In this document: one piece after another, positions 1,171 to 61,107 of the stretch
How positions within the stretch are numbered: the stretch's first letter is position 1
Layout: each line of letters begins with the position of its first letter
Assembly: GCF_006345805.1 (NCBI RefSeq)
Contig: NW_021836177.1
Coordinates: forward strand, 13,441-77,440
Reading direction: 5' to 3'
From: Octopus sinensis
Taxonomy: Eukaryota
DNA length: 64,000 bases
Notes under the pieces: generated by a model
The model's database searches: none
Told to the model about the DNA's origin: nothing
The model's input: only the letters and a program-made list of their open reading frames with translations
Program-made: the position numbers and the translations under genes

Positions 1171-2146
1171 TTTAGCTAAGTGTTCTATGGTCTATGACCA
1201 GAACTCGGGAAACTTGCTTGACTGTTCTATGGTCTATCACCAGAACTCGGGAAACTTGCTTGACTGCTCTATGGTCTATGACCAGAACTCGGCAAACTTG
1301 GTTGAGTGTTCTATGGTCTATGACCAGAACTCGGGAAACTTGATAGACTGTTCTATGGTCTATGACCAGAACTCGGGAAACTTGCTTGACTGTTCTATGG
1401 TCTATGACCAGAACTCGGCAAACTTGGTTGAGTGTTCTATGGTCTATGACCAGAACTCGGGAAACTTGCTTGACTGTTCTATGGTCTATGACCAGAACTC
1501 GGGAAACTTGCTTGACTGTTCTATGGTCTATGACCAGAACTCGGGAAACTTGCTTGACTGTTCTATGGTCTATGACCAGAACTCGGGAAACTTGATAGAC
1601 TGTTCTATGGTCTATGACCAGAACTCGGGAAACTTGGTTGAGTGTTCTATGGTCTATGACCAGAACTCGGGAAACTTGGTTGACTGTTCTATGGTCTATG
1701 ACCAGAACTCGGGGAACTTGCTTGACTGTTCTATGGTCTATGACCAGAACTCGGGAAACTTGCTTGACTGTTCTATGGTCTATGACCAGAACTCGGGGAA
1801 CTTGGTTGAGTGTTCTATGGTCTATGACCAGAACTCGGGGAACTTGGTTGAGTGTTCTATGGTCTATGACCAGAACTCGGGAAACTTGCTTGACTGTTCT
1901 ATGGTCTATGACCAGAACTCGGGGAACTTGGTTGAGTGTTCTATGGTCTATGACCAGAACTCGGGAAACTTGCTTGGCTGTTCTATGGTCTATGACCAGA
2001 ACTCGGGAAACTTGCTTGACTGTTCTATGGTCTATGACCAGAACTCGGCAAACTTGGTTCAGTGTTCTATGGTCTATGACCAGAACTCGGGAAACTTGCT
2101 TGACTGTTCTATGGTCTATGACCAGAACTCGGGAAACTTGGTTGAG
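1171..2146. repeat. 42-bp minisatellite, ~23 copies (ORF 1187..2176 of 14-aa repeats, probably non-coding)
   Basis: Unit TGTTCTATGGTCTATGACCAGAACTCGGGAAACTTGCTTGAC with a few recurring variants. Confidence 0.95.
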
Positions 2147-4524: not shown

Positions 4525-5096
4525 TCATCATCATCATCATCTTCGTTTAGCGTCAGTTTTCCATGCTGGCATGGGATGGACGGTGCAACTGGGGTCTGGG
4601 AAGCCAGAAGGCTGTACCAGGCCCAGTCTGATCTGGCAATCTTTCTACGGCTGGATGCCCTTCCTAACGCCAACCACTCCATGAGTGTAGCGAGTGCTTT
4701 TTACGTGCCACCTGCACAGGTGCCAGACGAGTCTGGCAAACGGCCACAGTCGGCTGGTGCTTTTTACGTGCCACCTGCACAGGTGCCAGACGAGTCTGGC
4801 AAACGGCCACAGTCGGCTGGTGCTTTTTACGTGCCACCGGCACGGAGGCGAGGCGAGGCTGGCAAACGGCCACAGTCGGGTTGTGCTTTTAACGTGCCAC
4901 CGGCACGGAGTTGAGGCGAGGCTGGCAAATGGCCACGGTCGGATGGTGCTTTTTACGTGCCATCGGCACGGAAGCCAGTCAGGGTGGCACTGGCAACGCC
5001 CACGTTCGGATAGTTCTCTTATGTGCCACCAGCACTGGTATCACAGCGACAATTTCCATTCATGTTGATCGATTTTGATTTTTGATTTTTGATTTC
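4525..5096 (-). mobile_element. RTE 3' UTR with (GAT)n tail and ~5 x 63-bp internal repeats, inverted relative to the adjacent RTE body
   Basis: Matches the 3' UTRs attached to the RTE copies at 11081 and 26740. Confidence 0.85.
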
Positions 5097-5099
5097 TAA

Positions 5100-8868
<3,769 letters not shown>

Positions 8869-8988: not shown

Positions 8989-10310
8989 CTAGCAGAATTG
9001 CCCGGCGATGCTCGGGACTGATTTGCTTGAAAGTACTGTTAATGATTGCACTGAATTATGATGATTATTCAGGCAAATATTTATATAAGTTTACGGTGGG
9101 AGATAAGGACTTAACGATCAAACGTGTGCCATTGCATTGTTTTGGGGGAACCAAATTTCTAATGAGCATTATAGGGGCACCAACTTTAAGTTTGAGAATG
9201 TGTGGTGGTAGTCCGGGGGTCTCAAAGGATCTGAGTACCTCTATTGGATAGTTGATGACGTCCTCTGGGTCAGGAGTTGTATCGATAGACTTATATACAT
9301 AGACATCCCCAGGAATGAGTTTTAGCATTTCATCATTAATATGGTGAACAGTTTTATTCCTCGGGACCAGAATAGCCCTTTGGCCAATCCAATCCATATT
9401 CTGATAATTAGCTTGTAGATCTGGGAACACTGCATCTCTGAGATCAGAAGGCGTTTTAACGATGGTACAAATGGAATCGATGGCAATATTACCATTTTCA
9501 TCCCCTGGTATTTTGCCTTCGCCAAGTGCAAGGAGGGTGTGAGGAAATGCTGCTGATGTGATATCACGTCGCATATGAGCATGCATATTGGTGTGAAGTT
9601 TGAGAGTCTTCACCAGTGGCCACAATGTGGATGACTTAAGACACGCACTTACTGCATCAGCTCTAGTCCCTTTGGGAATAACGGGAAGTGTTTGTCGGAA
9701 GTCCCCTGAAAGAAGAAGTGTTATGCCTCCCATGGGAGCTGAAGAGTGTTTGATGTCTCTGAGAGATCTATCTAGTGCCTCAAGAGCACCTCTGTGGGCC
9801 ATCGTGCATTCATCCCAAACGATAAGCTTGCATCGTCTGAAGACTTCTGCCTGATCGGAGCTGTTACTGATGTTGCAAGTTGTTGGTGTCTCAGTCTTCG
9901 CTAAGTCAAGCGGAAGCTTGAAAGTGGAGTGAGCTGTCCTGCCGCCTGGAAACAAAGTAGCCGCAATTCCAGATGATGCCACAGCTAGGGCAATGCCTTG
10001 TGTTCGCCTAATCTCAGCCAATATTAATTTGTTGAGAAAAGTTTTCCCAGTGCCCCCAGGAGCGTCCAGGAAAAAAATCCCCCCCAGCTTTGGCCCGGAC
10101 TGAATTAGCAACGGAGTTGTGAGCGAACTTCTGTTCTGGAAGGAGCTTTGGCTCATTGTCGGCTATGTACTCGGCAAGCTCGTCAACATTAAAACATTCT
10201 CACGCAGCAAATGTGAAGACAGAGTGTTTGTGCCTTCCCGGTTTGTTGAAGGTAGGCTATAGACCGGCAAGGCACTACCGCCCATATCAAGTACAGTATC
10301 TTCGAACGTA
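8989..10310 (-). mobile_element. Helitron fragment encoding PIF1-family helicase (ORF 9065..10156) joined to a Helitron 3' terminus
   Basis: DAPGGTGKT (Walker A), IVWDECTM, GDFRQTLPV and LIRNL motifs. Hairpin CCCGAG-CATCG-CCGGG and CTAG at 8989-8992, with a T beyond it. Confidence 0.9.
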
Positions 10311-11080: not shown

Positions 11081-14000
11081 CATCATCATCATCATCATCA
11101 TCATCGTTTAACGTCCGTTCTCCATGCTAGCATGGGTTGGACGGTTCGACCGGGGATCTGGGAAGCCAGAAGGCTGCACCAGGCTCCGGTCTTATCTGGC
11201 AATGTTTCTACAGCTGGATGCCCTTCCTAACGCCAACCACTCCGTGAGTGTAGTGGGTGCTTTTTACGTGCCACCTGCACTGGAGCCAGGCGAGGCTGGC
11301 ATTGGCCACGGTCGGATTGGTGCATTTTACGTGCCACCTGCACGGAAGCCAGTCGAGGCGGCACTGGCTTCGGCCACGATTCAGATTGCACTTTTTACGT
11401 ATCTCCAGTCCAGGGGTCCTGGCATCTGCCGGGTGCCAGTCATAGGATTGGTTCAATTTCGATTCCGATTTCACTTGCCCCAACAGGTCTTCGCAAGCAA
11501 AGGGGGGTAGGCATGGGTGCCTGTCGTCGGATGAGGTTCGATATCGACTTCGCTTTTCTCAACAGGTCTTTGTGTGTCCAAGGGAGGAAAGGCATGCATA
11601 AGTGGGCTGGACTCACTTGTCCTGCCTCGTCTTTTCACGCACAGCATATTTTCAAAGATCTCGGTCGCAAGTCATTTCCTCAGTGAGACCTAAAGTTCGA
11701 AGGTCGTGCTTCACCACCTCAGCCCAAGTTTTCCTGGGTCTACCTTTACCACGGGTTCTCTCCACTGCTAGGGATTGGCACTTTTCACACACCTATCTTC
11801 ATCCATTCTCGCCACATGACCATACCAGCGCAATCATCTCTCTTGCACACCACAACTGATGCTCCTTAAGTCCAACATTTCTCTCAGGGTACTAACGCTC
11901 TGTCGAGCATGCACATTGACATTACACATCCATCGGAGCATACTGGCTTCATTTCTCGCGAGCTTACGCATGTCCTCAGCAGTCACGGCCCATGTTTCAC
12001 TGCCATGTAGCATGGCTGTTCGTACACATGCATCATACAGTCTGCCTTTTACTCTGAGCGAGAGGCCTTTTGTCACCAGCAGAGGTAAGAGCTCTCTGAA
12101 CTTTGCCCAAGCTATTCTTACTCTAGCAGTTACACTTTCACCACACTACCCCCACTACTGACTTGGTCACCAAGATAACGGAAGCTATCAACTACTTCTA
12201 GTTTTTCCCCCTGGAAAGTGACGGAAGTTGTTTTCTGCAGATTTTCAGAGGTTAATGCTCCCGAGCATCTGCCACATACGAAAACTATCTTCCCAGTTAG
12301 CCTTCCTTTGACATTGCTGCACCTCTTATGTGTCCATAGCTTACACTGGGTACATCTTATAGAGTTTTTACCTACACCTTTTCTACAGATCGAGCAGGGC
12401 CATATTCCTGAAGACATTTGTGGATTGTCTACCTTCCTACTTATTAGTACTTTGGTTTTAGCTAGGTTGACTCTAAGGCCCCTCGATTCTAGACCCTTCT
12501 TCCACACCTGGAACTTCTCCTCCAGTTCTGATAGTGACTCAGCAATTATAGCAAGGTCGTCAGAATATAGGAGCTCCCAGGGGCAACCTGTCTTGAATTC
12601 CTCCGTAATTGCCTGGAAGACTATGATAAATAGGAGGGGGCTGAGGACTGAACACTGGTGGACCCCAACTTCTACTTTGAATTCTTCTGTGTACATGTTG
12701 CAAACCCTAACCTTACTTACGGCATCCCTGTACATGGCTTGCACAGCCCTCACCAGCCATTCATCTATCCCTAGTTTCCTCATTGACCACCAGATAAGGG
12801 ATCGGGGGACCCTGTCAAAATCTTTCTCCATGTCAACGAAAGCCAGGTACAGGGCTTATCTTCGGCTAGGTATTTCTCCTGCAGTTGTCTCACCAGAAAT
12901 ATGGCATCAGTGGTGCTTTTCCCTGGCATGAACCAAACTGCATCTCGTCCAAGTTGACTCTCTCCCTAATCAGTTGGGCTATGACCCTCTCTGTAACCTT
13001 CATTACCTGATCCAACAGCTTGATACCTCTGTAATTATTTGTATCTAGGGCGTCTCCTTTACCTTTGTAGCAGTTGACTAGTATGCTGCTACACCAGTCA
13101 TTGGGTATGACTCCTTCGTGTATCACCTGGTTAACTATACGGGTGACTAGGTTATAGCCGACACTGCCAGATATTTTGAGCATCTCTGCAGTAATTCCTG
13201 ATGGGCCTGGGGCTTTCCCTGTCTTCGTGCTTCTAATTGCCTTAACTACCAAAGAATTGTCAACTCGGATGGCTGGTCCCTCTGTTGGGTCGACATTTGG
13301 CAGACTCTCTTTCTCCCATTCATTTTCTTTATTCAGCAACCTTTCATAGTGGCGTCTCCAAACCTCTCTCTTTGCATCCTCATTTAGCGCAAGTGAACCA
13401 TCATCCATGCGGACACATTTCTCTCCTACCACATCACGATTCTCTCTCACACACTGTCTTGCAACACGAAATACCTCAAGTCTTTCATCCTCACGGCGCA
13501 GAACATTGGCAAATTTGTTCTTATCCGCTTCCCCTCTGGCTAAATAATACCTGTCTCCTAGCTTCCCTTCTGGCTATCTGATACAACTCCCTGCTACCAC
13601 CGTTCTTCCAGTCCTTCCAAGCCTGTCTCTTTTGTCTAATAGCCCTGTCAACCACCTTGTTCCACCACCACGTTACTCTGGGTCGAGAGGGGACTTTGCT
13701 CTATCCACAGATCTGGTCAGTGGCTGTCAGCAGATTGTCCCGTAGAAATCTCCAGTTGTCTTCCACATTAAGTGAAGCTATATCCCCTTCTATTTCGTCA
13801 AAGGCTTCCAGTAGTATGTCTCTAAATCTCTGTCCATTTGCAGGATCTTTAAGCTTCCAGACCCTTCTCCTCCAAGCTGGTCTTCTTCTGGGCAACCATT
13901 TAGCTCTGATCCTGATGTCGCTAACTACTATTCTATGTTGAGGAGTACATTCTTCGCCTGGAAAGGTTTCGGCATTTATAAGCAGCCCTCTTTCCCTCTT

Positions 14001-25157: not shown

Positions 25158-26818
25158 TATACATAAATATATATACATATATATATATATACACACAGAT
25201 ATATATATATATATTTTATATAATATTATATATTATATATATATTATATATATATATATTTATTATATATATATATATATATGTTATATATATATATATA
25301 TATATATATACATAGGAAGGTAGACAAATCACAAACACCTTCAGGTAGATGGCCCTGCTCGATCTGTAGAAAAGGTGTAGGTAGAAACTCTATAAGATGC
25401 ACCAAGTGTAAGCTATGGACACATAAGAGATGCAGCAATGTCAAAGGAAGGCTAACTAGGAAGATGGTTTTTGTATGTGGCAGATGCTCAGGAACAATAA
25501 ACACTGAAAATGCTCTGAGACCAACTTCCATCACTTTCCAGGGAGAAAAACTAGAAATAGTTGATAGTTTCCGTTACCTAGGTGACCAAGTCAGCAGCGG
25601 GGGTGGGTGTGCTGAAAGTGTAACTGCTAGAGTAAGAATAGCTTGGGCAAAGTTCAGAGAGCTCTTACCTCTGCTGGTGACAAAAGGCCTCTCGCACAGA
25701 GTGAAAGGCAGACTGTATGATGCGTGTGTACGAACAGCCATGCTACATGGCAGTGTGAAACATGGGCCGTGACTGCTGAGGATATGCGTAAGCTCGCTAG
25801 AAATGAAGCCAGTATGCTCCGATGGATGTGTAATGCCGGTACTCACACTCGGCAGAGTGTAAGTACCTTGAGAGAAAAGCTGGACCTAAGAAGTATCAGT
25901 TGTGGTGTGCAAGAGAGACGTTTGCGCGTGGTATGATCATGTGGCGAGAATGGATGAAGATAGTTGTGTGAAAAAGTGCCACACCCTAGCGGTTGAGGGA
26001 ACCTGTGGAAGAGGCAGACCCAGGAAAACCTGGGACGAGGTGGTGAAGCACGACCTTCAAACTTTAGGTCTCACTGAGGAAATGACTAGAGACTGAGACC
26101 TCTGGAAGTGTGCTGTGCGCGAGAAGACCCGGCAGGACAAGTGAGTCCATAACCCGTGGCCTTCTACATGGGATGGAGCCAGCCTACGTATGCATACCTT
26201 CCCTTCTTGGGACACAAAACTCTACTTGTGAAGACGTGTTGAGGCAAGTGAGGATCAGAATCGAAATCGATCAATGGAAATTGCGGATATGCTACCAGTG
26301 CGGTGGCATGTCGAAACTCTGCTTGTGAAGACCTGTTGAGGCAAGTGAGGATCAGAATCGAAATCGATCAATGGAATTGCAGATGTGTTACCAGTGCCGG
26401 TGGCATGTAAGAGAACTTTCCGTTTCGCGACCGTTGCCAGCACCGCCCCGTTTCGTGTCCGTTGCCAGCCTCGTCTGGCCCTCGTGCCGGTGGCACATAA
26501 AAAGCACCATCCGTTCGTGGCCGTTTGCCAGCTCTGTCTGGCACCAGTGCGGGTGGCACGTAAAAAGCACCCACTACACTCACGGAGTGGTTGGCGTTAG
26601 GAAGGGCATCCAGCCGTAGAAACACTGCCAGATTTGACTGGGCCTGATGAAGCCTTCTGGCTTCACAGACCCCAGTAGAACCGTCCAACCCATGCTAGCA
26701 TGGAAAACGGACGCTAAACGATGATGATGATGATGATGATATAGGCTTCGAATGTCCCATCTGTGTTTTTTGTATTGTCTTGCATTCTTGTAATGTTTTG
26801 CATTCTTGTCCCAGTTTG

Positions 26819-27855: not shown

Positions 27856-28780
27856 ATACATATATATATATATATCAAAATAGATGAACATCAATGGAAT
27901 TTGTATCTTTGTGGTACCAGTGCCGGTGGCACACAAGAAAACCATCCGAACATGGCCGTAGCCAGTACCGCATCGACTGGCCTCCGTGCTGTGGGCACGT
28001 AACAAACACCATCCGATCGTGGCCGTTCGCCAGCCTCATCTGGCACCTGTGTCGGTGGCACATAAAAACACCATCCGAGCGTGGCCGTCTGCCAGCCTCG
28101 TCTGGCACCTGTGTCGGTGGCACATAAAATCACCCACTACACTCTCGGAGTGGTTGGCGTTAGGAAGGGCATCCAGCTGTAGAAACACTGCCAGATCTGA
28201 CTGGCCTGGTGCAGCCTTCGGGCTCCCCAGACCCCAGTTGAACCGTCTAACCCATGCTAGCATGGAAAGCGGACGTTAAATGATGATGATGATATATATA
28301 TATATATATATAAGTGAATACAATGTCTTGTTGTTGAGATAGGTTCTCTTTCTTTCTTTATGAGAAGATTGCATTATTTTACACCGTTTATTCCTTTTCA
28401 ATAAAACCAATGTTGTCTTCGAAACATATGTCGAATATAAAAGAATTGGAATAACATCTGCATTCAACTCCATTTATTTACTTATACTACACAAATTACT
28501 GCACATTAACCCGGAGTTTCTACCTTTGAATAGGTCGCTACATCCTTGTTACTTGCATGAATTTTGCTACCCTGGTAACTGTTTATTGAATTTTCCATGT
28601 TAACGGTAAAGGAAGAATAATTCATTCATCAATTTATATATATATATATATACATATTTGTATGTGTGTGTGTTTGTATGTTATGTAAACCTATTGTATA
28701 TATGTATATACATATAATGTATGTATAATAGATGTATTATATGTGTGTGTATAAAATATATATATATATATATACATATA

Positions 28781-33301: not shown

Positions 33302-33385
33302 ATGGATGTAAATAAGATTATAAGCAACATTGTGGATGGGGACTTTAAAGATGTCGAACAACTTATCAAAGAAAATCCTGAAACT
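33302..33385 (+). CDS. Coding exon 1 (MDVNKIISNIVDGDFKDVEQLIKENPET), N-terminal ankyrin cap
   Basis: Pyrimidine tract plus AAG acceptor at 33299, ATG at 33302, 84 nt, donor GTAAGT at 33386, phase 0. Confidence 0.8.
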
Positions 33386-34994: not shown

Positions 34995-35146
34995 GTCAAC
35001 CAAATAAACTCACACAGTAAAACTTTCTTAATGGCAGCTTGTGAACAGGGCAGCACAAGTCTAATAGCCTTCTTGATAGAATCTGGAGCCAATATGGACA
35101 TGAGTGACAAAGCAGGTCTGACAGCATTACATTATGCTGTGAAAAG
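34995..35146 (+). CDS. Coding exon 2, ankyrin repeats (KTFLMAACEQG...GLTALHYAVK)
   Basis: ttctcttcAG acceptor, GTAAGG donor, 152 nt, phase 0 to 2, ankyrin consensus. Confidence 0.92.
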
Positions 35147-36699
35147 GTAAGGCTTGAATTAACTAAAATCTTCAGATCTGCTTTTGTTTTGAAATTTTTT
35201 GCAATTCCAGACTATTTGAATATCCAAAGATACCATAATAGTGGCAGTGTGACACGATAACAGCATGATAGTAGTAACCAAATAACATCTTTTACTCATT
35301 TTCTCCATGAATCCTCTTCATTGAATCACCAAAATCTTTTTCGTTATTTGTTGTCAAAACAGATTATTTTTGTTTTCGAGATATTCTTTGAGATCCAACA
35401 GTTCTTAAAATTGACCCAGTGTGATTCAGTGTCTTCTCTTCATATTGATTATGGAGAGATCGATCAATTTTTCTCCAAAGAAAATGTTATTTGAGATCTA
35501 AAGCAACAAGAAAGATTCTCAAGCTTGTTTTTGCAGTAAATAATCTGTAAATTTCTTACAGAAATTATTTCTCACCTCCATCAGCAACTCAACACATTTT
35601 GAGATCTATTATATTTTGAATTGTGCTTCATAAGGTCATCTCTGGACAATAAAACATGTTTTGAAGTTCTTGTTAGTTTCTATAGCTTCTGCAGTCACAA
35701 ATTGTTTCAGAATTTTGCCCAAACACACAAACACACACACACACCATCATCGTCATCGAATGTTCCTTTTCCTTTGATAGGAACAGACAAGTCAGAAGAC
35801 CACACCAAACACTACTGTCTGCTTAGGTTTGGTTTCTATGGCTGGACGACCTTCCTAACACCAACCACTTTGCAGAGTGTACTGGATGCCTTTTACATGC
35901 CATCAGAACCAGTGAGGTCACCAATTAATTGCAAGACAAAGACCTCTCGACTGGTTGAGGTGGTGGGATGGGGGAGCTAATATTGCTGGAGAGAAAGGTG
36001 TCTTGCATTAGAAGAGGGACATGGCTCCTTCAGATGGAGAAGACAGAGGAGGGAAACACTAGGTTAAAATCTTGTGTTTGGCCCAAGCAAAGAAAAAAGG
36101 AAAAACATAGTGCAATAGGTGTGAAACAACATGTAGTAAACGAATACTCTTACTCTTTTACTTGTTTCAGTCATTTGACTGTGGCCATGCTGGAGCACCG
36201 CCTTTAATCGAGCAACTCGACCCCGGGACTTATTCTTTGTAAGCCCAGTACATATTCTATCAGTCTCTTTTGCTGAACCACTAAGTGACAGGGACATAAA
36301 CACACCAGCATCGGTTGTCAAGCAATGCTAGGGGGACACAGACACACAAACACACACGCACACATATATATATATACATATATACGACGAGCTTCTTTCA
36401 GTTTCCGTCTACCAAATCCACTCATAAGGCTTTGGTCGGCCTGAGGTTATAGTAGAAGACACTTGACCAAGGTGCCACGCAGTGGGACTGAACCTGGAAC
36501 CATGTGGCTGGTAAGCAAGCTGCTTATCAAACAGCCACTCCTGCGCCTATGGAAAAAAAAAATATGGCGAACGGGAGGTGGGGAGACGACTCGGAAATTC
36601 AAATCTCACCACTTCCCCATTCGTCGGCGATCCTATGACCACGAGTCCACTGCCCTAACCACTGGGCCATTGCGCCTCCACTCTATATCTATATATATC

Positions 36700-38766: not shown

Positions 38767-38923
38767 ATATAAAATTGATGCAGTGGCCTCCTTAGTTTCC
38801 AGGGGAGCAAATGTTAATAAGCAGACCTCACTGGGCAACACACCTCTACATCTGGCTGTGAGGAAGAACTATGAAGATGTAGTCAAAGTCCTGTTAAGTA
38901 GCAAAGGAAATAACATTTTACAG
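38767..38923 (+). CDS. Coding exon 3, ankyrin repeats (GANVNKQTSLGNTPLHLAVRKNYEDVVKVLL)
   Basis: ccttttAG acceptor, GTTAGC donor, 157 nt, phase 2 to 0. The TPLH motif is in ORF 38726..39037. Confidence 0.93.
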
Positions 38924-39284
38924 GTTAGCGAATACATTTATATTTGTGTATATAGATATGTATATATATGTATGTGTGTGTTATATGTATATGATGTATA
39001 CATACAGTTTAGTGCCCCAAATTTCGTTTCTTCATAACTGATGATCCATATTATTTAAAATAAAACTTGCTGCAAGACTTCCTTTTCTACCCCACAAAAA
39101 AACCACCCTTTCTTTAAATTTTTTTCCCCGACACAAATCCCGCTTTTCGGTTAAGGGAAATACGAATCTGCAAAAAAATTGGGGTTTTGGCAAAAAAATT
39201 CTTTGAATAAGCAAATTTAGGTGAAAATGGTGGTGGTGGTGGTGGGGGGACTCTTTTGAAAGTTGCTCATTTCCTTGTGTGAGA

Positions 39285-39534: not shown

Positions 39535-41419
39535 GTCAATCAGCGAAACAATAATGGTTGGACACCTCTACATCTTGCCTCTAATCAAGGACACACAGAC
39601 ACAGCTAAACTTCTCCTACAACAAGATGGCACTGATGTGAGGGTGGTGGACAACGATGGTTGGACACCTCTACATCGTGCCTCGTATAATGGACACACAG
39701 ACACAGCTAAACTTCTCCTACAACAAAATAACACTGATGTGAGGGTGGTGGACAACGCTGGTTGGACACCTCTACATCGTGCCTCGTATAATGGACACAC
39801 AGACACAGCTAAACTTCTCCTACAACAAGATGGCACTGATGTGAGGGTGGTGGACAACGCTGGTTGGACACCTCTACATCGTGCCTCGTATAATGGACAC
39901 ACAGACACAGCTAAGCTTCTCCTACAACAAGATGGCACTGATGTGAGGGTGGTGGACAACGCTGGTTGGACACCTCTACATCGTGCCTCGTATAATGGAC
40001 ACACAGACACAGTTAAACTTCTCCTACAACAAAATGGCACTGATGTGAGGGTGGTGGACAACGCTGGTTGGACACTTCTACATCGTGCCTCGTATAATGG
40101 ACACACAGACACAGCTAAACTTCTCCTACAACAAGATGGCACTGATGTGAGGGTGGTGACCAACGCTGGTTGGACACCTCTACATCATGCCTCGTATAAT
40201 GGACACACAGACACAGCTAAACTTCTCCTACAACAAAATGGCACTGATGTGAGGGTGGTGGACAACGCTGGTTGGACACCTCTACATCGTGCCTCGTATA
40301 ATGGACACACAGACACAGTTAAACTTCTCCTACAACAAAATGGCACTGATGTGAGGGTGGTGGACAACGCTGGTTGGACACCTCTACATCATGCCTCGTA
40401 TAATGGACACACAGACACAGCTAAACTTCTCCTACAACAAGATGGCACTGATGTGAGGGTGGTGGACAACGCTGGTTGGACACCTCTACATCGTGCCTCG
40501 TATAATGGACACAGACACAGTTAAACTTCTCCTACACACAAATGGCACTGATGTGAGGGTGGTGGACAACGCTGGTTGGACACCTCTACATCGTGCCTCG
40601 TATAATGGACACACAGACACAGTTAAACTTCTCCTACAACAAAATGGCACTGATGTGAGGGTGGTGGACAACGCTGGTTGGACACCTCTACATCGTGCCT
40701 CGTATAATGGACACACAGACACAGTTAAACTTCTCCTACAACAAAATGGCACTGATGTGAGGGTGGTGGACAACGATGGTTGGACACCTCTACATCGTGC
40801 CTCGTATAATGGACACACAGACACAGTTAAACTTCTCCTACAACAAAATGGCACTGATGTGAGGGTGGTGGACAACGCTGGTTGGACACCTCTACATCGT
40901 GCCTCGTATAATGGACACACAGACACAGTTAAACTTCTCCTACAACAAAATGGCACTGATGTGAGGGTGGTGGACAACGCTGGTTGGACACCTCTACATC
41001 GTGCCTCGTATAATGGACACACAGACACAGTTAAACTTCTCCTACAAACAATGGCACTGATGTGAGGGTGGTGACAACGCTGGTTGGACACCTCTACATC
41101 GTGCCTCGTATAATGGACACACAGACACAGTTAAACTTCTCCTACAACAAAATGGCACTGATGTGAGGGTGGTGGACAACGATGGTTGGACACCTCTCCA
41201 TCTTGCCTCTAATCAAGGACACACAGACACAGCTAAACTTCTCCTACAACAAAATGGCACTGATGTGAGGGTGGTGACCAAATATGGTTGGACACCTCTA
41301 CATCTTGCCTCTAATCAAGGACACACAGACACAGCTAAACTCCTCCTACAACAAAATGGCATCGATGCCAATAAAGCGGACAATGATGGTGACACTCCTC
41401 TCCATGTGGCAGTTCAAGG
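39535..41419 (+). CDS. Coding exon 4: 19 ankyrin repeats in a 102-bp (34-aa) tandem array; frameshifted as assembled
   Basis: ttttttAG acceptor and GG|GTAAGT donor. G-x-TPLH motifs start at 39556+102n up to 41388. Deletions of 2 nt (~40510) and 1+1 nt (~41045, ~41073) split it into ORFs 39637, 40493 and 41163. Restoring 4 nt gives 1889 nt, which is the required phase 2. Confidence 0.93.
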
Positions 41420-43044: not shown

Positions 43045-43455
43045 ATATGTAGGATCCAAGGATTGAGACGTAGGAAGGTGAGCTTTCAGGAACAAAAGGG
43101 GTTTATTGGGGTGCAAGGTTGTTGGTTTTTCCCTTACCGCATCTTCTGTGTTTGAACATGTGCCTCCTATTGACAGTGTAAACTTCATTTAATCAAGACA
43201 CCCTTGGTCTGAAGAGTGGCCTGTGGTATACACCTCGTTTGGATATTTACCAGTTCTGATGTTCCACCTGCTTTGAAACATACGTAGCCCAGATTTTATC
43301 TTAACTCATATATATATATACACACATGTATAATGTGTATTTGTGTGTATGTAATTATTGATGTAATTAGGTTATAATGACCTAATTACATTTGTTTTCA
43401 TTGGTTAATCTAATAATAATAATTGTTTTTCCTCTCCTCTTTGTATAACTTTCAG

Positions 43456-43492
43456 GCAACAATATGGTGTGGTATCGTTGATGCTGGCCCAG
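43456..43492 (+). CDS. Coding exon 5 (G-QQYGVVSLMLAQ), completes the last array repeat
   Basis: tttcAG acceptor, GTTAGT donor, 37 nt, phase 2 to 0. Continues GDTPLHVAVQG as ankyrin helix 2. Confidence 0.82.
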
Positions 43493-48561: not shown

Positions 48562-48777
48562 GATTCAGTGAAACTGGATATCGAGAATCATAAGAAATGA
48601 CACCATTGATGGAAGCCGTTTCAGGGTTGGGGCCCACCTCGGAATAATCCATAAACTTATTATAAATGGTGCAACATAAATGCTGTCAACAATGATGGCA
48701 ATAATTGTTTGCACCTCTCAATAATAAAAAAAGAGATGTTCCATTCTGAGGTGGAACCCATTCCCATTTTAGATGAG
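48562..48777 (+). CDS. Coding exon 6, ankyrin repeats (KMTPLMEAVS..GHLGIIHKLIINGANINAVNNDGNNCLHL); internal indels
   Basis: cacaaAG acceptor and GAG|GTAAGT donor. The ankyrin reading needs +1 A at AAGAAATG and at GCAACATA, and correction of a G/C-run segment near 48625-48635. Confidence 0.78.
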
Positions 48778-50893: not shown

Positions 50894-51069
50894 TGCTGCA
50901 GAGAGCTCCAACTGGACATGGATAGGAGGCTCTCTGGAATAGTAGTTTTGAGTTACCTTGCCAGCCAAGGAGCCAGCTTATACCATCATAATAATAAGAA
51001 AATGACCCCATTGGACTACATAGAAAATCAACATTTGAAAGAAAAATTAAAAACATTTTTACAATCACT
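50894..51069 (+). CDS. Coding exon 7 (CCRELQLDMDRRLSGIVVLSYLASQGASLYHHNNKKMTPLDY...), last ankyrin-like repeat
   Basis: tttgcAG acceptor, GTAAGT donor, 176 nt, phase 0 to 2, open frame (ORF 50888..51073). Confidence 0.9.
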
Positions 51070-52062: not shown

Positions 52063-52200
52063 GTGTCGGTGGTGTCAAGAAAAAAGGCTACTGTCACACT
52101 CCATCCATGTCAACATACCGTTACTTGTCAGAATTGCTGTTCTCAATGACATTTAAGCAATGCCCCATATGTCATCAACACATACACCGGAAGTGGATTT
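52063..52200 (+). CDS. Coding exon 8, RING finger (CRWC...PCQH...CQNC...CPIC); indels as assembled
   Basis: ttccacAG acceptor and GTAAG donor. The C3HC4 ligand spacing appears after adding one A in the A-run at ~52080 and one at CAATG ~52146. The 3' end needs a further indel correction to give phase 1. Confidence 0.82.
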
Positions 52201-53048
52201 GTAAGAACATTCTTTCTTGATCTGTCTGTTGTCTCATTAACTTTCTGGTATGGAATAATGCATTTCATATTGTAGTGGAGACATGCAACTCCTTGTTTGT
52301 AACTATATATTATGAACACTTGTTATAATGTTTGCCATCCTTTTAGACATTTTATACTCACACTCGTTAGTTTTTAGATGTGATTAATGCTAAAAGAGAC
52401 ATTGTTTTCTGACTCTTTCACCTTTTGGCTTTACTTTTGAGTTGATTCGTTTTAATTCGAACATGAAGCCTGGTCATTGCTCCAAGGTGGTATCAGAAAG
52501 TTCACGGACTAGTTCTGTAGCATGCCAACAGATGGCTGCACACCGTTGCGCGCACAGTGAGAGCTAGCAATGACTTTCATGAGGCAGTGTGCTGGGTGAC
52601 ACCACTGCGTTTACTTCAAAAGTTGTGAAATTTGTGCTTTTGTGGTCATTTGTAGGCTGTAGTCTGCAATTTTCTAATGGGCAGGAACAAATAACCAATG
52701 TGAAATTTTGCGTTAAACTTGTCCAGCAAAGACATAAGAAAGAAACAACAAAACTAAAAGAAAAAGAGTGTTATGAAGTGATAACTGAATGAGAGAATTT
52801 CAGAATTGTTAGATTAGTATATAGGATGTCTTAAGAGAAAGATGAGATTTAGAAAGGTTTGCCTATTTTGTTGTGGTTCTAAATATTGAACTATTATTTA
52901 GTAACAGCTTAGAAAGTGTTGACCGAAAGCATAGTGGTCACCAATTGACTATTGATGATATGAATGCCTTACAATAATGGAATATAGATTATTAAAAGAG
53001 ACAAAGAAATTTTACTATGAAGTATAAACTTTGAAATGCTTATTTCAG

Positions 53049-53099
53049 TGTGTCCAAAGTCTGAAGAAGAAGCAGCAAAGGCAGTTGCAGAGTCTGTTG
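53049..53099 (+). CDS. Cassette exon 9 (CPKSEEEAAKAVAESV), phase 1-1, paralogue of exon 12
   Basis: atttcAG acceptor, GTTG|GTGAGT donor, 51 nt, open. Confidence 0.65.
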
Positions 53100-53214
53100 G
53101 TGAGTATAAAATAACTGTAATTGATTTCTATAAATTTTACCTTCACCTGAGTTATATTATTTGTGTGAGTGTCTGAGAACAGGTTCCATTCCTAATTTCC
53201 AATTCTTATTTCAG

Positions 53215-53263
53215 TGTGTCCAAAGTCTGAAGAAAAGCACCCGGGCGGTTGTAGAATCTGTTG
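53215..53263 (+). pseudogene. Cassette exon 10, tandem copy of exon 9, 2 nt short (pseudo-exon or assembly error)
   Basis: First 20 nt identical to exon 9, same splice sites, 49 nt so not frame-preserving. Confidence 0.5.
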
Positions 53264-53278
53264 GTGAGTATAAAATAA

Positions 53279-53515
53279 CTGTAATTGATTTCTATAAATT
53301 TTACTTTCACCTGAGATATATTGTTTTTTTGAATGACTGTATTGATTTTCCTATAACTTTTACTGTTCACCTGAGATATATTGTTTTTTGTGAATGACTG
53401 TAATTGATTTCTATAAATTTTACTTTCACCTGAGATATATTGTTTTTGTGAATGACTGTAATTGATTTCTAAAATTTTACTTTCACCTGAGATATATTGT
53501 TTTTTGTGATGACTG
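53279..53515. repeat. ~59-bp minisatellite, 4 copies, derived from intron sequence just downstream of the exon 9/10 donors
   Basis: Units start CTGTAATTGATT at about 53279, 53337, 53398 and 53456. Confidence 0.85.
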
Positions 53516-53852: not shown

Positions 53853-53923
53853 AGAGTTTATTTTGGAGGAAACCGCTTCCATAGCACATCGAAGAAAAGT
53901 GGCAGTTAAGCAACAGCAAGTTG
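53853..53923 (+). CDS. Cassette exon 11 (EFILEETASIAHRRKVAVKQQQV), paralogue of exon 12, 1 nt short
   Basis: tatttcAG acceptor, CAGCAAGTTG|GTGAGT donor identical to exon 12, 71 nt versus 72 nt. Confidence 0.5.
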
Positions 53924-54779
53924 GTGAGTATAAAATAAGTCCGTAAGTGATTTCAAATTAGTTTTACTTCACTTGAGCATATTTTGTTTTTCAGAAGGAC
54001 TGAGAACAGGTTCCATTCTTAATTTTCAATTAATAATTCTTTTGAAGAAATTGCTGAAATTTAAGAGAATGCCCACCAAGGTTAGAACAGACAAAAGTTA
54101 ATGATGTCTTTTGGAATAGAGAACTAAAATATGTTATTTGGTTGGGGGTGAACAAGTGCTTTAACGACAAGGCTTTCGTTTTGCATTTATACTGTGTTTA
54201 CTAATAAGTTGTTGTTTTAGCAGGAGTCTCTCATAATCTGGCAGACTTACAATGAAATGCATTCCCAGTGTCAACATCCTGTCTTTTTGTCACTGATAGG
54301 AAATCTATCATTACATCCATTAAACACATTGTCTTTATCGAAGTAGAAAACACTGGCTTGCTACTGAGATAACCATTGCTTCTTTGTTGTTTTTCTCTCT
54401 CTCTCGCTTTCTCTTTTTGATATATACTAGATGCAAGATACAATAAATGACATTGTCCTCATCATTTATCATCAGATAAATGTTCCTGTGGAATGGATGG
54501 TGGAGGGTGGGGGTGGGTCACTGTCCAAGTCAGTTCTTATTAGCAGTTACTGTCCACCTTCATTGGTTGAGGATCATGTCCCACTAAAACATTCCAGCTT
54601 TCCTATGATGGTCTACCCTTCCTAACACCATCCACTTTATAAAGGATCCTGGGTACATTTTATTGTGGCACAAATACAAGAAAGATTGTTATGTATTCAA
54701 CAAAATTAAACATTCCTCTCGAACTTATGCAAAGAAATATCAGACATGTTGAAAGAGGAAAGGAAAGTAAATGAATTAG

Positions 54780-57669: not shown

Positions 57670-57741
57670 AAACTCCAAAGTTAGAGGAGAAGTGTCTCCA
57701 AGATGTTGCAAAATTGTTAGGAGTCAACTGGCAGCAAGTTG
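57670..57741 (+). CDS. Coding exon 12, N-terminal part of death domain (TPKLEEKCLQDVAKLLGVNWQQV)
   Basis: atttcAG acceptor, GTGAGT donor, 72 nt, phase 1-1. Matches the death-fold pattern L-x2-VA-x2-LG-x2-W. Confidence 0.87.
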
Positions 57742-58699
57742 GTGAGTATAAAATAACAGTACTTAATTGATTTCAATAAGTGTCAGCTTTTGTTTGTCAG
57801 CATGACTAAGAGAAGATCCCATTCCTACTTTCCAATTGAAAGGCTAGCTGTAAAGTGATTCTATTAAAGGTGTTGGTGTTATGTGTAGTTTCGTTCTAGA
57901 TGGGTGATGGACATTGTTATTGTTTTACGTGTTTATTTACTTCACTTGTTACACGAACTGTCAGCATTCGGCGTAGTGATACATATATACTTTAGACACA
58001 GTTCGTACTGTTTACTAACAAAATAGTGCCAAAAGTGGGGATGTATTCTACACACGTATACCTACGTATACACATAGATATGAATGTGTAACAGTTGGTA
58101 TTACTGAAACATCATAAAATAGCCACCGAGATTAGCGGGGTCAGTAAAATGGCTAAATTAGAGGACATAATCGATTTAATATTGTCTTTTGAGAGAGCAA
58201 ATTAAAATATGTCATTTAAGGGTAAACTGGTGAGTTAATGATAATTTTTTTTTTGTTTGTTTTACATTTTTACTAAGTTTACGTTTTGTTGTTTTTTATT
58301 TGCAAAATGCCTGTTTTAATCAGAAATACGATGGAAAGTGTTTCAGGTGGGACATCTCTGTCTTTCAGTTGGTAGTACAGGACTACATCATTAAGTGCAT
58401 CCTTTTTTACATGCTCCTGTGTATAGTGAGTGGCATGTTGCAGTCACTCCACTGTCCAGTGTCCATTTAGTTGTGAACCACTCTTCACTGACATGTAATG
58501 GTTGATTGTACGTAGGTGGATGGTGTTTATGTTGGTGATTCCTGTCTTCTTTCCTGCAAGTTAAAACTCTCCTCTTTGCTTGGTTTAACTTAACACCTCT
58601 CTATTACACTGGGTAACAACGATTTTTGTCCATGGATAACAATTGTTATTTCCAATTTGCTTAACCCTAGAAAATACGAGAATGGCTAGTATCTCCTTC

Positions 58700-60901: not shown

Positions 60902-61107
60902 GCAGGAATTTAGGAATCAAAAATGTTGATCTGGGGATTATCAGGACTGACTATCCTCATAACACTAAAGAGCAGAGCTTCCAGATGCTGCACACATGGT
61001 ACACAAGTTGTGATCCAGAGATGCGAACATTCAAAACACTCAGAAAAGCTCTTGAGGAAGCTGAATGCTTTGAGGCACTTCAATGTCTACCATCAGAAGA
61101 AAAGTGA
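60902..61107 (+). CDS. Terminal coding exon 13, remainder of death domain (GRNLGIKNVDLGIIRTDYPHNTKEQSFQMLHTW...LRKALEEAEC) and stop
   Basis: ttttgcAG acceptor in phase 1, TGA at 61105-61107. Matches the death-domain pattern LG...I...YP...EQ.FQML..W.......L..AL. Confidence 0.9.

What the first reader, a model, noticed from the sequence alone, without database searches (positions are those of the whole stretch)
39535..41419. Single-exon ankyrin array under concerted evolution, varying mainly at ligand-facing positions
Eighteen 102-bp units are nearly identical at the DNA level, including synonymous sites, while ankyrins in flanking exons are highly diverged. Edge units (HLASNQG) differ from internal ones (HRASYNG/HHASYNG), and there is a left-to-right gradient (TAK/QQD to TVK/QQN), the pattern expected from unequal crossover. 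Most changes fall at repeat positions 1-3 (DNA/DND/TNA/TKY), 10 (R/H/L) and 13-14 (YN/NQ), the beta-turn and helix-1 face randomised in DARPin libraries. This parallels the highly conserved internal repeats of fungal NLRs such as HET-D/E, where repeat shuffling creates new specificities. It may be a repeat-shuffling recognition module in an animal (inference).
Basis: partly seen in the sequence, partly recalled or inferred. Interest (0 to 1): 0.8.

Follow-up and report, generated by a model that had tools for sequence, protein, structure and literature searches.

The report
Octopus ankyrin-repeat exon, recently amplified
This is one large exon of an octopus gene (ankyrin repeats + RING ubiquitin-ligase finger + death domain) in which a single 34-residue ankyrin unit has recently been copied about 15 times; the family around it varies mainly on the ligand-binding face, as fungal immune receptors do, but this copy is nearly uniform and sits on an error-prone contig with frameshifts.

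Summary
The 18-unit, 102-bp array (39547-41378, inside exon 39535-41419) is real. U2-U16 are 97.3% identical and six units are identical. As assembled it is not one open frame: three 1-2-nt deletions (about 40509, 41047, 41072) shift it.

The window is Octopus sinensis unplaced contig VCDQ01005388.1. The exon belongs to a multi-copy gene family that I found only in Octopus: N-terminal exon, 2 diverged ANK, a single-exon array of 34-aa units, more ANK, RING (zf-C3HC4_3), linker, Death domain.

A colinear sister contig (L002) has an intact 10-unit array. Annotated paralogues P0131 and P0159 have 7 and 4 units. Across these, the framework is invariant and variation sits at unit positions 1-3, 5, 10 and 12-14, the beta-turn and inner helix. 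This overlaps the DARPin-randomised positions (P=0.001).

The window's internal units do not show that pattern. Their commonest variants are A20V (outer helix) and N27D (loop).

At least 10 frameshifts are spread over the gene's exons. They match a contig-wide excess of 1-2-nt indels and there is no excess of amino-acid change, so assembly error is likelier than decay.

Verdict: a new animal variant of the "highly internally conserved repeat" kind. The function is inferred.

The parts
33302..33385 (+). Exon 1 (start codon; MDVNKIISNIVDGDFKDVEQLIKENPET)
   Evidence: tblastn of paralogue P0131 residues 1-29, 90% identity. Donor ACT|gtaagt.
34995..35147 (+). Exon 2, diverged ankyrin repeat
   Evidence: Pfam Ank/Ank_2. 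96% identical to P0131. Donor AAAAG|gtaagg.
38767..38925 (+). Exon 3, diverged ankyrin repeat
   Evidence: Pfam Ank 9.4e-11. 89% identical to P0131 and P0137. Splice sites read.
39535..41419 (+). Array exon: 4 lead-in codons, 18 units of 102 bp (39547-41378), then the start of a terminal diverged repeat. Three frame-breaking deletions at about 40509 (-2), about 41047 (-1) and about 41072 (-1).
   Evidence: Pfam Ank 3.7e-91 for the first 329 aa. AlphaFold2 pLDDT 98.2. Foldseek TM 0.92 to ankyrin-1.
40465..41174 (+). U10-U16: a run of seven TVK/QQN units, identical except for one substitution (U13), a 3-nt change in U10 and the indels. This is the most recent amplification.
   Evidence: V20 is absent from every paralogue unit examined.
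43455..43491 (+). Exon 5a (G)QQYGVVSLMLAQ. It joins the array exon in phase if the array frame is restored.
48562..48777 (+). Exon 5b, ANK region. It has three frame breaks relative to L002, at about 48594, 48622 and 48672.
50894..51069 (+). Exon 6, last ANK-like segment. 98% identical to O. sinensis P0124 and P0137.
52063..52203 (+). RING (zf-C3HC4_3) exon. All Cys/His ligands are present, but the exon is split over three frames by 1-2-nt deletions at about 52080 and 52144, with further deletions at about 52190 and 52200.
   Evidence: The RING is assigned in paralogues by Pfam.
53048..53262 (+). Two copies of a 51-nt linker mini-exon (VCPKSEE..AV.ESV) inside 166-bp exon+intron tandem units. 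The second copy is frame-broken.
   Evidence: Copy number is 3 in L002 and 5 in O. vulgaris L003.
53863..53937 (+). Linker exon (..NRFHSTSKKVAVKQQQ), frame-broken
57670..57743 (+). Death domain, first exon
60902..61107 (+). Death domain, last exon, with stop codon
   Evidence: Pfam Death 4.2e-05, 24.0 bits against a cut-off of 22.6. Also.

Best explanation
The feature is the main target-binding exon of one member of an Ank-RING-Death gene family that I found only in Octopus.

Shown:
- The exon encodes a canonical ankyrin solenoid of 34-residue units.
- Its units are kept almost identical at the DNA level, synonymous sites included. Unit number differs strongly between very close loci. This is what unequal crossing-over or gene conversion between 102-bp units produces.
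- Across family members, differences between units are confined to the beta-turn (positions 1-3, 5) and the inner helix (10, 12-14).

In this copy, one unit type (DNAGW...HRASYNG, closest to units 5 and 6 of the sister locus) has recently been amplified to 15 of 18 units. A sub-lineage marked by a private A20V change accounts for nine of them. The result is an unusually long, monotonous binding face rather than a diversified one.

Inferred:
- The solenoid selects a protein target.
- The C-terminal RING ubiquitinates that target or a partner.
- The Death domain couples the protein to death-domain oligomers in immune or cell-death signalling.

The frameshifts in this contig are most likely long-read consensus errors, so the gene is probably intact in the animal.
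For: Array anatomy and identity.

Fold:
- Pfam Ank 3.7e-91.
- AlphaFold2 with an alignment gives pLDDT 98.2, with helices at unit positions 7-14 and 17-24.
- Foldseek TM 0.92 and rmsd 1.8 A to ankyrin-1.
- The register to DARPins was fixed by alignment to 6mol.

Gene and family:
- The window matches O. sinensis contig VCDQ01005388.1.
- Paralogues P0131 and P0137 have Ank + zf-C3HC4_3 + Death. The ten best profile hits whose source names I looked up are all from Octopus.

Repeat-number change between close loci:
- L002 is colinear with window 31830-63421 at 92-97% identity, yet has an intact 10-unit array against 18 here.

Hypervariable face in paralogues:
- Entropy is high at positions 1, 2, 3, 5, 10, 13 and 14, and the framework is invariant.
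- Overlap with DARPin-randomised positions is 5 of 6, P=0.0011.
- pN is 0.32 at those codons and 0.015 in the framework.

Recent single-unit amplification:
- Six units are identical.
- V20 is private to this array.
- The nearest L002 units are u5 and u6, at 2-4 nt.

Frameshifts as errors:
- Every exonic indel is 1-2 nt in a short run, apart from one 5-6-nt insertion.
- In introns polarised with O. vulgaris L003, small indels per substitution are 0.30 (window), 0.17 (L002) and 0.03 (O. vulgaris).
- Amino-acid changes unique to the window number 8, against 9 unique to L002, over 375 sites.
Against: - At least 10 frameshifts affect this copy, while the sister contig from the same assembly has none in the same exons.
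- The window's exonic indel rate (7 in 777 nt) is slightly above its intronic rate (P=0.047). A young pseudogene is therefore not excluded.
- NCBI splits the locus into two gene models.
- The copy has lost the face diversity seen in its relatives, which is odd for a recognition module.
- pN/pS at the variable codons is about 1, not above 1, and synonymous differences are also raised there. Positive selection is not demonstrated.
- No expression, ligand or population data were available.
- Whether the window and L002 are alleles or paralogues is unresolved.
Confidence: 0.6

Rival explanations
1. Young pseudogene. This copy is a decaying duplicate, or a null allele, of the intact L002-type gene. 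The array expansion is then neutral slippage or unequal exchange in unconstrained DNA.
For: - There are at least 10 frame breaks over the array, exon 5b, the RING and the linker exons, against none in L002.
- The exonic indel rate is slightly above the intronic rate (P=0.047).
- W-specific exonic substitutions number 14, against 6 for L002, in 777 sites.
- Face diversity has been lost.
- The ratio of synonymous to nonsynonymous variable sites among internal units is compatible with neutrality (P=0.20).
- NCBI truncates the model at the first exon-5b frameshift.
Against: - Both O. sinensis contigs carry a 6-10-fold excess of 1-2-nt indels per substitution compared with the O. vulgaris lineage. 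Most such indels are therefore artefacts.
- There are no substitution-type stop codons.
- The splice sites and all RING zinc ligands are intact.
- Amino-acid changes unique to the window (8) equal those unique to L002 (9).
- The array has fewer indels than the contig-wide rate predicts (3 against about 6).
Confidence: 0.27
2. Assembly artefact. The length and homogeneity of the array, especially U10-U16, are products of mis-assembly of a low-coverage unplaced contig.
For: - The contig is unplaced and only 77 kb long.
- Its small-indel error rate is high.
- Six units are identical.
- Arrays of highly similar repeats are known to be hard to assemble (PMC12222747).
Against: - Unit-specific substitutions are scattered through the array (U2, U4, U6, U7, U9, U13).
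- A 1.9-kb array is well within the length of a single long read. Long-read assemblies of such arrays were found reliable in PMC12222747.
- Typical long-read errors are small indels or collapses, not added units.
- Related arrays of 10, 7 and 4 units exist independently.
Confidence: 0.08
3. Structural spacer. The long uniform solenoid serves as a scaffold or spring, as in ankyrin or NOMPC, and is not a specificity-determining surface. Unit number then tunes length only.
For: - The internal units are uniform.
- The best structural matches are long solenoids such as ankyrin-1.
Against: - In the paralogues, variation is focused on the concave face and the framework is invariant. A spacer would not show that pattern.
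- The RING and Death partners point to substrate selection and signalling.
Confidence: 0.05

Closest known systems
Highly internally conserved (HIC) ANK/WD40/TPR repeat domains of fungal NLRs (HET-D/E, the NWD family, Pa_3_8560; Paoletti 2007, Dyrka 2014 PMC4986451; PMC12222747)
   Same: - Repeats are more than 85% identical over at least 100 aa.
- Synonymous sites are homogenised (concerted evolution).
- Repeat number changes between close loci.
- At family level, hypervariable codons lie on the beta-hairpin and inner-helix binding face of ANK repeats.
   Different: - It is in an animal (a cephalopod).
- There is no NACHT/NB-ARC NTPase and no HET/HeLo-type effector. The partners are a RING finger and a Death domain.
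- Allelic polymorphism and positive selection are not shown.
- This copy is nearly monomorphic on the binding face.
MIB1/MIB2 E3 ubiquitin ligases (the names NCBI gives many family members)
   Same: An ankyrin block is followed by a C-terminal zf-C3HC4_3 RING. The MIB1 ANK domain is a structural match (8v0e).
   Different: - Pfam reports no MIB/HERC2 or ZZ domain in any of the six paralogues scanned.
- A Death domain is appended.
- The ANK units are near-identical and variable in number.
Canonical ankyrins (ANK1-3) and ANKDD1
   Same: An ankyrin solenoid plus a C-terminal Death domain. The best fold match is ankyrin-1 (TM 0.92).
   Different: - There is no ZU5-UPA module.
- A RING lies between the ANK block and the Death domain.
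- The unit is 34 residues.
- The family is lineage-specific and multi-copy.
Designed ankyrin repeat proteins (DARPins)
   Same: A consensus-like invariant framework. Variability in the paralogues falls at five of the six library-randomised positions (2, 3, 5, 13, 14).
   Different: - It is natural.
- Positions 1, 10 and 12 also vary, while DARPin position 33 (unit position 34) does not.
- There is one extra loop residue.
Other animal proteins with near-identical ANK arrays found here: Haliotis rufescens LOC124125871 (Caspase-nSTAND3-ANK), Dysidea avara ANK-Roc-COR, Lingula ANK-TIR
   Same: Tandem ANK units with 67-88% mean pairwise identity, attached to cell-death or immune-type modules.
   Different: The partner domains differ. 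No orthology is implied. I did not analyse their variable positions.

Membership tests
Ankyrin repeat (Pfam PF00023 / clan Ank) | About 33-residue helix-turn-helix plus beta-hairpin unit with TPLH and G-H motifs, stacking into a solenoid | tested here: met
   Pfam Ank 3.7e-91 and Ank_2 2.9e-89. AlphaFold2 pLDDT 98.2 with two helices per unit. TM 0.92 to ankyrin-1. The period is 34 because of one extra loop residue.
HIC repeat domain (sensu Dyrka et al. 2014) | More than 85% identity between repeats over at least 100 aa | tested here: met
   TRF gives 96% matches over 1.8 kb. U2-U16 have 97.3% mean nucleotide identity.
HIC repeat domain (sensu Dyrka et al. 2014) | Repeat-number polymorphism / concerted evolution | tested here: inconclusive
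   Unit counts are 18 (window), 10 (L002, about 2-3% flank divergence), 7 (P0131) and 4 (P0159). Framework pS is only 0.05. Whether any of these loci are alleles could not be tested.
HIC repeat domain (sensu Dyrka et al. 2014) | Hypervariable codons on the ligand-binding face, under diversifying selection | tested here: inconclusive
   Location is met for the paralogues (P=0.0011) but not for this array's internal units (P=0.87). pN/pS at those codons is about 1. No site-model test was run.
NLR / STAND receptors (HET-D/E-like) | Central NACHT or NB-ARC NTPase domain | tested here: not met
   Pfam scans of full-length paralogues show only Ank, zf-C3HC4_3 and Death. No such exon was seen in the window.
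MIB1/MIB2 E3 ligases | N-terminal MIB/HERC2 and ZZ domains, ANK block, C-terminal RING(s) | tested here: not met
   The ANK block and zf-C3HC4_3 RING are present. MIB/HERC2 and ZZ are absent from all six paralogues scanned.
Canonical ankyrins (ANK1-3) | 24 ANK repeats, ZU5-ZU5-UPA supramodule, Death domain | tested here: not met
   The Death domain is present. There is no ZU5/UPA hit, and a RING is present instead.
RING E3 ligase (zf-C3HC4_3) | Eight Cys/His zinc ligands in a cross-brace spacing; E3 activity | tested here: inconclusive
   The pieces CRWC..PCQH..CQNC..CPIC are all present in the window but lie in three frames. The RING is intact in P0131 and P0137 (Pfam 2.7e-10). Activity is not testable here.
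Death domain superfamily | Six-helix death fold able to form homotypic oligomers | tested here: met
   Pfam Death scores 24.0 bits (cut-off 22.6) on the last exon alone, and 38-41 bits over profile positions 2-79 in the paralogues. Oligomerisation was not tested.

The most novel reading that the evidence does not exclude
Octopuses carry a lineage-specific repertoire of intracellular Ank-RING-Death ubiquitin ligases. Their single-exon ankyrin arrays evolve as fungal HIC-NLR sensors do: concerted evolution of an invariant framework, gain and loss of units by unequal exchange, and diversity maintained on the concave face. This would give a cephalopod a fast-evolving, germline-encoded recognition system that works without a NOD module. 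The 18-unit and 10-unit arrays on the two unplaced contigs could even be alleles of one hyper-polymorphic locus.
Probability: 0.3. Interest if true: 0.7.

Novelty: new variant of a known kind. Interest (0 to 1): 0.5.

Why it matters
Highly internally conserved repeat sensors are well documented in fungal NLRs. In animals they are rare: 0.8% of metazoan ANK/TPR/WD repeats in Dyrka et al. 2014 (PMC4986451), and PMC12222747 mentions one sea-urchin LRR case.

If the pattern is real, an Octopus family would show the same framework-versus-face pattern on a RING-Death chassis. That would mean the repeat-shuffling route to new binding specificities has arisen independently in a cephalopod, coupled to ubiquitination and death-fold signalling. 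Such a family is an obvious candidate for cephalopod innate immunity, about which little is known.

There is also a practical lesson. Such loci end up on unplaced, poorly polished contigs, and annotators split or mis-frame them. Both the NCBI models at this locus and the P0137 model for L002 are affected.

Tried and rejected
1. The first protein search with a 326-aa piece found nothing above 50% identity. I first read this as "no relatives". I then noticed that the listed hits never exceeded about 1.75 times the query length. A 729-aa query with X at each frame break found the Octopus paralogues.

2. Single-sequence AlphaFold2 gave a meaningless all-beta model (pLDDT 55) and was discarded. The run with a 43-sequence alignment gave pLDDT 98.

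3. The look-up of encoding contigs had no record for P0131 or P0159. DNA-level unit analysis was therefore limited to the window and L002.

4. The O. vulgaris locus L003 is colinear only from window 43324 onward. Its first 5.7 kb holds no array. The orthologous O. vulgaris array was not reached.

5. At first I took the symmetry of raw window/L002 gaps (144 against 142) as favouring a pseudogene. Polarising with L003 showed that both O. sinensis contigs have a large small-indel excess, which reversed that reading.

6. Literature searches for an octopus Ank-RING-Death family found nothing specific. The O. sinensis genome paper was not retrievable, so statements about how it was sequenced rest on my own knowledge.

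7. A possible 3-unit higher-order periodicity (U3-5 against U6-8) was considered. It is not supported by TRF and was dropped.
Full report
**1. What is in the sequence**

TRF reports a single array at 39555-41361 with period 102, 17.8 copies, 96% matches and score 3234. Anchoring on GGTTGGACAC gives 18 unit starts. Sixteen spacings are 102 nt and two are 100 nt.

In codon register the units run from 39547 to 41378. They lie inside one exon bounded by ttttag|GTCAATCAG (39535) and CAAGG|gtaagt (41419).

The consensus unit is DNAGWTPLHRASYNGHTDTAKLLLQQNGTDVRVV, 34 aa.

- U2-U16 differ from each other by 0-7 nt, with mean identity 97.3%.
- U5, U8, U11, U12, U14 and U16 are identical.
- U1, U17 and U18 are the HLASNQG edge type.

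The exon as assembled is not a continuous ORF. U10 has lost CA from CACACA. U15 has lost one base in ACAAAA and one G at its end. The reading frame therefore goes 0, +1, 0, +2.

**2. What gene it belongs to**

Downstream exons match O. sinensis protein P0124 at 98-100%. That protein maps to unplaced contig VCDQ01005388.1 (77,440 bp) of GCA_006345805.1. Window position equals record position minus 13,440.

A long query with X at each frame break recovered Octopus paralogues P0131 (726 aa), P0137 (669 aa) and P0159 (607 aa). In P0131 and P0137, Pfam finds Ank repeats, one zf-C3HC4_3 RING and a C-terminal Death domain.

All the corresponding exons are present in the window, as listed under parts. 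The last exon alone passes the Pfam Death threshold.

A profile of the C-terminal module against 1.84 billion representatives gave 85 clusters at E<=1e-30. Some of those are generic long ankyrin proteins. The ten best hits whose source names I looked up are all from O. sinensis, O. vulgaris or O. bimaculoides. They carry assorted names: MIB2-like, ankyrin-3-like, PSMD10-like.

There is no NACHT/NB-ARC, MIB/HERC2, ZZ or ZU5 domain.

**3. Fold and register**

With a 43-sequence alignment, AlphaFold2 models residues 1-326 of the exon at pLDDT 98.2.

- Helix 1 covers unit positions 7-14.
- Helix 2 covers unit positions 17-24.
- The best fold match is the ankyrin-1 membrane-binding domain, TM 0.92 and rmsd 1.8 A.

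Alignment to a DARPin (6mol) fixes the register. Unit positions 1-26 equal DARPin positions 1-26. Position 27 is an inserted loop residue. Position 34 equals DARPin position 33.

The DARPin-randomised positions therefore map to unit positions 2, 3, 5, 13, 14 and 34. That set of randomised positions comes from my own knowledge of the Pluckthun library design.

**4. The sister locus and the family pattern**

P0137 is encoded on another unplaced contig, VCDQ01005398.1 (L002). L002 is colinear with window 31830-63421 at 92-97% identity.

Its array exon is an intact ORF of 10 units plus the terminal repeat. Those units differ at positions 1-3, 5, 10 and 12-14. GHTDTAKLLLQQ[ND]GTDVRVV is essentially invariant.

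I pooled the 21 units of L002, P0131 and P0159.

- Entropy is 0.9 bit or more at positions 1, 2, 3, 5, 10, 13 and 14, and at the N/D loop position 27.
- Five of the six DARPin positions are in that set (hypergeometric P=0.0011).

At the DNA level in L002:

| Codon class | pN | pS |
|---|---|---|
| Variable codons | 0.32 | 0.31 |
| Framework codons | 0.015 | 0.059 |

So the framework is homogenised even at silent sites, while the face codons are old or fast at both kinds of site. This is the signature described for HIC repeats of fungal NLRs. [quoted passage not shown]

**5. This array is different**

Among U2-U16 the variable positions are 1, 3, 7, 10, 20, 25, 26, 27 and 28.

- The frequent variants are A20V (9 of 15 units, outer helix) and N27D (4 of 15, loop).
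- Position 5 is always W, and positions 13-14 are always YN.
- There is no enrichment on the binding face (P=0.87 and 0.35).
- One synonymous against about nine nonsynonymous variable sites is compatible with neutrality (P=0.20).

Over all 18 units, 20 of 38 variant cells fall at positions 1-3, 10 and 13-14. Most of those lie in the three edge units.

V20 occurs in no paralogue unit. It is always linked to N27, and it marks nine units, including the uninterrupted run U10-U16. The internal units are closest to L002 units 5 and 6, at 2-4 nt.

The simplest history is recent amplification of one unit type by unequal exchange. That amplification replaced the diversified units still present in the sister locus.

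**6. Frameshifts: error or decay?**

Besides the three breaks in the array, there are three in exon 5b, at least two in the RING exon and two in the linker exons. Against L002, all but one are 1-2-nt losses in short runs. The exception is a 5-6-nt insertion.

I polarised 13.4 kb of introns with the O. vulgaris locus L003 (OX597842.1). Lineage-specific counts are below.

| Lineage | Substitutions | Indels of 1-2 nt | Indels per substitution |
|---|---|---|---|
| Window | 152 | 45 | 0.30 |
| L002 | 150 | 26 | 0.17 |
| O. vulgaris (L003) | 269 | 8 | 0.03 |

Fisher tests give P=9e-12 for the window against L003 and P=5e-6 for L002 against L003.

Most small indels in both O. sinensis contigs therefore look like consensus errors. 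The window contig is the worse of the two.

- The array's three indels are fewer than that rate predicts (about 6).
- Amino-acid changes unique to the window (8) equal those unique to L002 (9) over 375 sites.
- No substitution creates a stop, and the zinc ligands and splice sites are intact.

Against this:

- The window's exonic indel density (7 in 777 nt) slightly exceeds its intronic density (P=0.047).
- Its lineage-specific exonic substitutions number 14, against 6 for L002.

I put assembly error at about two to one over a young pseudogene.

Whether the window and L002 are alleles or recent paralogues cannot be decided here. The facts bearing on it are:

- In the introns compared with L003, each of the two lineages carries about 1.1% private substitutions.
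- The two contigs overlap end-to-start.
- Both contigs are unplaced.

**7. Mechanism**

Shown: an ankyrin solenoid exon under concerted evolution, with rapid change in unit number, in a family whose unit-to-unit differences lie on the concave face.

Inferred from the established roles of the domains:

- ANK concave faces bind protein targets.
- zf-C3HC4_3 RINGs, as in MIB and IAP proteins, recruit E2 enzymes.
- Death domains form homotypic signalling oligomers.

On that basis the array would select a target, the RING would ubiquitinate it or a partner, and the Death domain would link the protein to death-fold assemblies. An immune role is plausible by analogy with lineage-specific Death-superfamily expansions fused to ankyrin and other repeats in marine invertebrates (PMC8195603). 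It is untested.

**8. Novelty**

HIC ANK arrays are known in fungal NLRs. Dyrka et al. found only 0.8% of metazoan ANK/TPR/WD repeats to be HIC.

The phenomenon is therefore not unique in animals.

I found no paper on an octopus Ank-RING-Death family.

I rate this a new variant of a known kind. The family is moderately interesting. This particular copy is the least informative member, because it is nearly uniform and poorly assembled.

Noticed in passing
window 53048-53515; L002 23289-23935; L003 14293-15105: A second, unusual tandem array in the same gene. 166-bp units each hold a 51-nt mini-exon (17 aa, VCPKSEE[EK]AA.AV.ESV) plus its intron. Copy number is 2 in the window, 3 in L002 and 5 in O. 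vulgaris, so the linker between the RING and the Death domain grows by exon+intron duplication. A 58-bp x4 intronic repeat follows.
   Followed up: partly
L002 12460-13534 against protein P0137: The NCBI model for the intact sister gene skips four array units and reads the last repeat in the wrong frame (..GHTDTLNFSYNKMASMPIKRTMMVTLLSIWQFKG..). The genomic exon is nevertheless one clean ORF in phase with the next exon. This is an annotation artefact of near-identical repeats.
   Followed up: partly
window 31830-63421 against L002 2475-34359: The two unplaced contigs overlap end-to-start over about 32 kb at 92-97% identity. Divergence is mosaic, from 1.2% to 4.6% substitutions by segment. That is compatible with two haplotypes of one locus or with a recent segmental duplication carrying conversion tracts.
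   Followed up: partly
window 5802-8647 (+) and 11837-13573 (-): LINE-type retrotransposon ORFs (Exo_endo_phos_2 and RVT_1). There is one long intact copy and one degraded inverted copy.
   Followed up: partly
window 9068-10162 (-): A 365-aa ORF with PIF1-like helicase and Pif1 2B domains (E=7e-60), probably a Helitron-type element.
   Followed up: no
window 1181-2145: A 42-bp x 23 tandem repeat (94% matches) that is open in several frames on both strands. It has only spurious Pfam hits and looks like a minisatellite.
   Followed up: no
window 4694-4972, 11260-11400, 26452-26571, 27994-28134: A dispersed 62-64-bp tandemly repeated motif (GTGCTTTTTACGTGCCACCGGCACGG...) recurs in both orientations, usually next to TA microsatellites. 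It is probably part of an abundant octopus repeat element.
   Followed up: no
proteins P0331, P0247, P0158 (not in the window): Other animals have near-identical ANK arrays on immune or cell-death chassis: Haliotis Caspase-nSTAND3-ANK (25 units, 81% mean identity), sponge ANK-Roc-COR (88%) and Lingula ANK-TIR (67%).
   Followed up: partly
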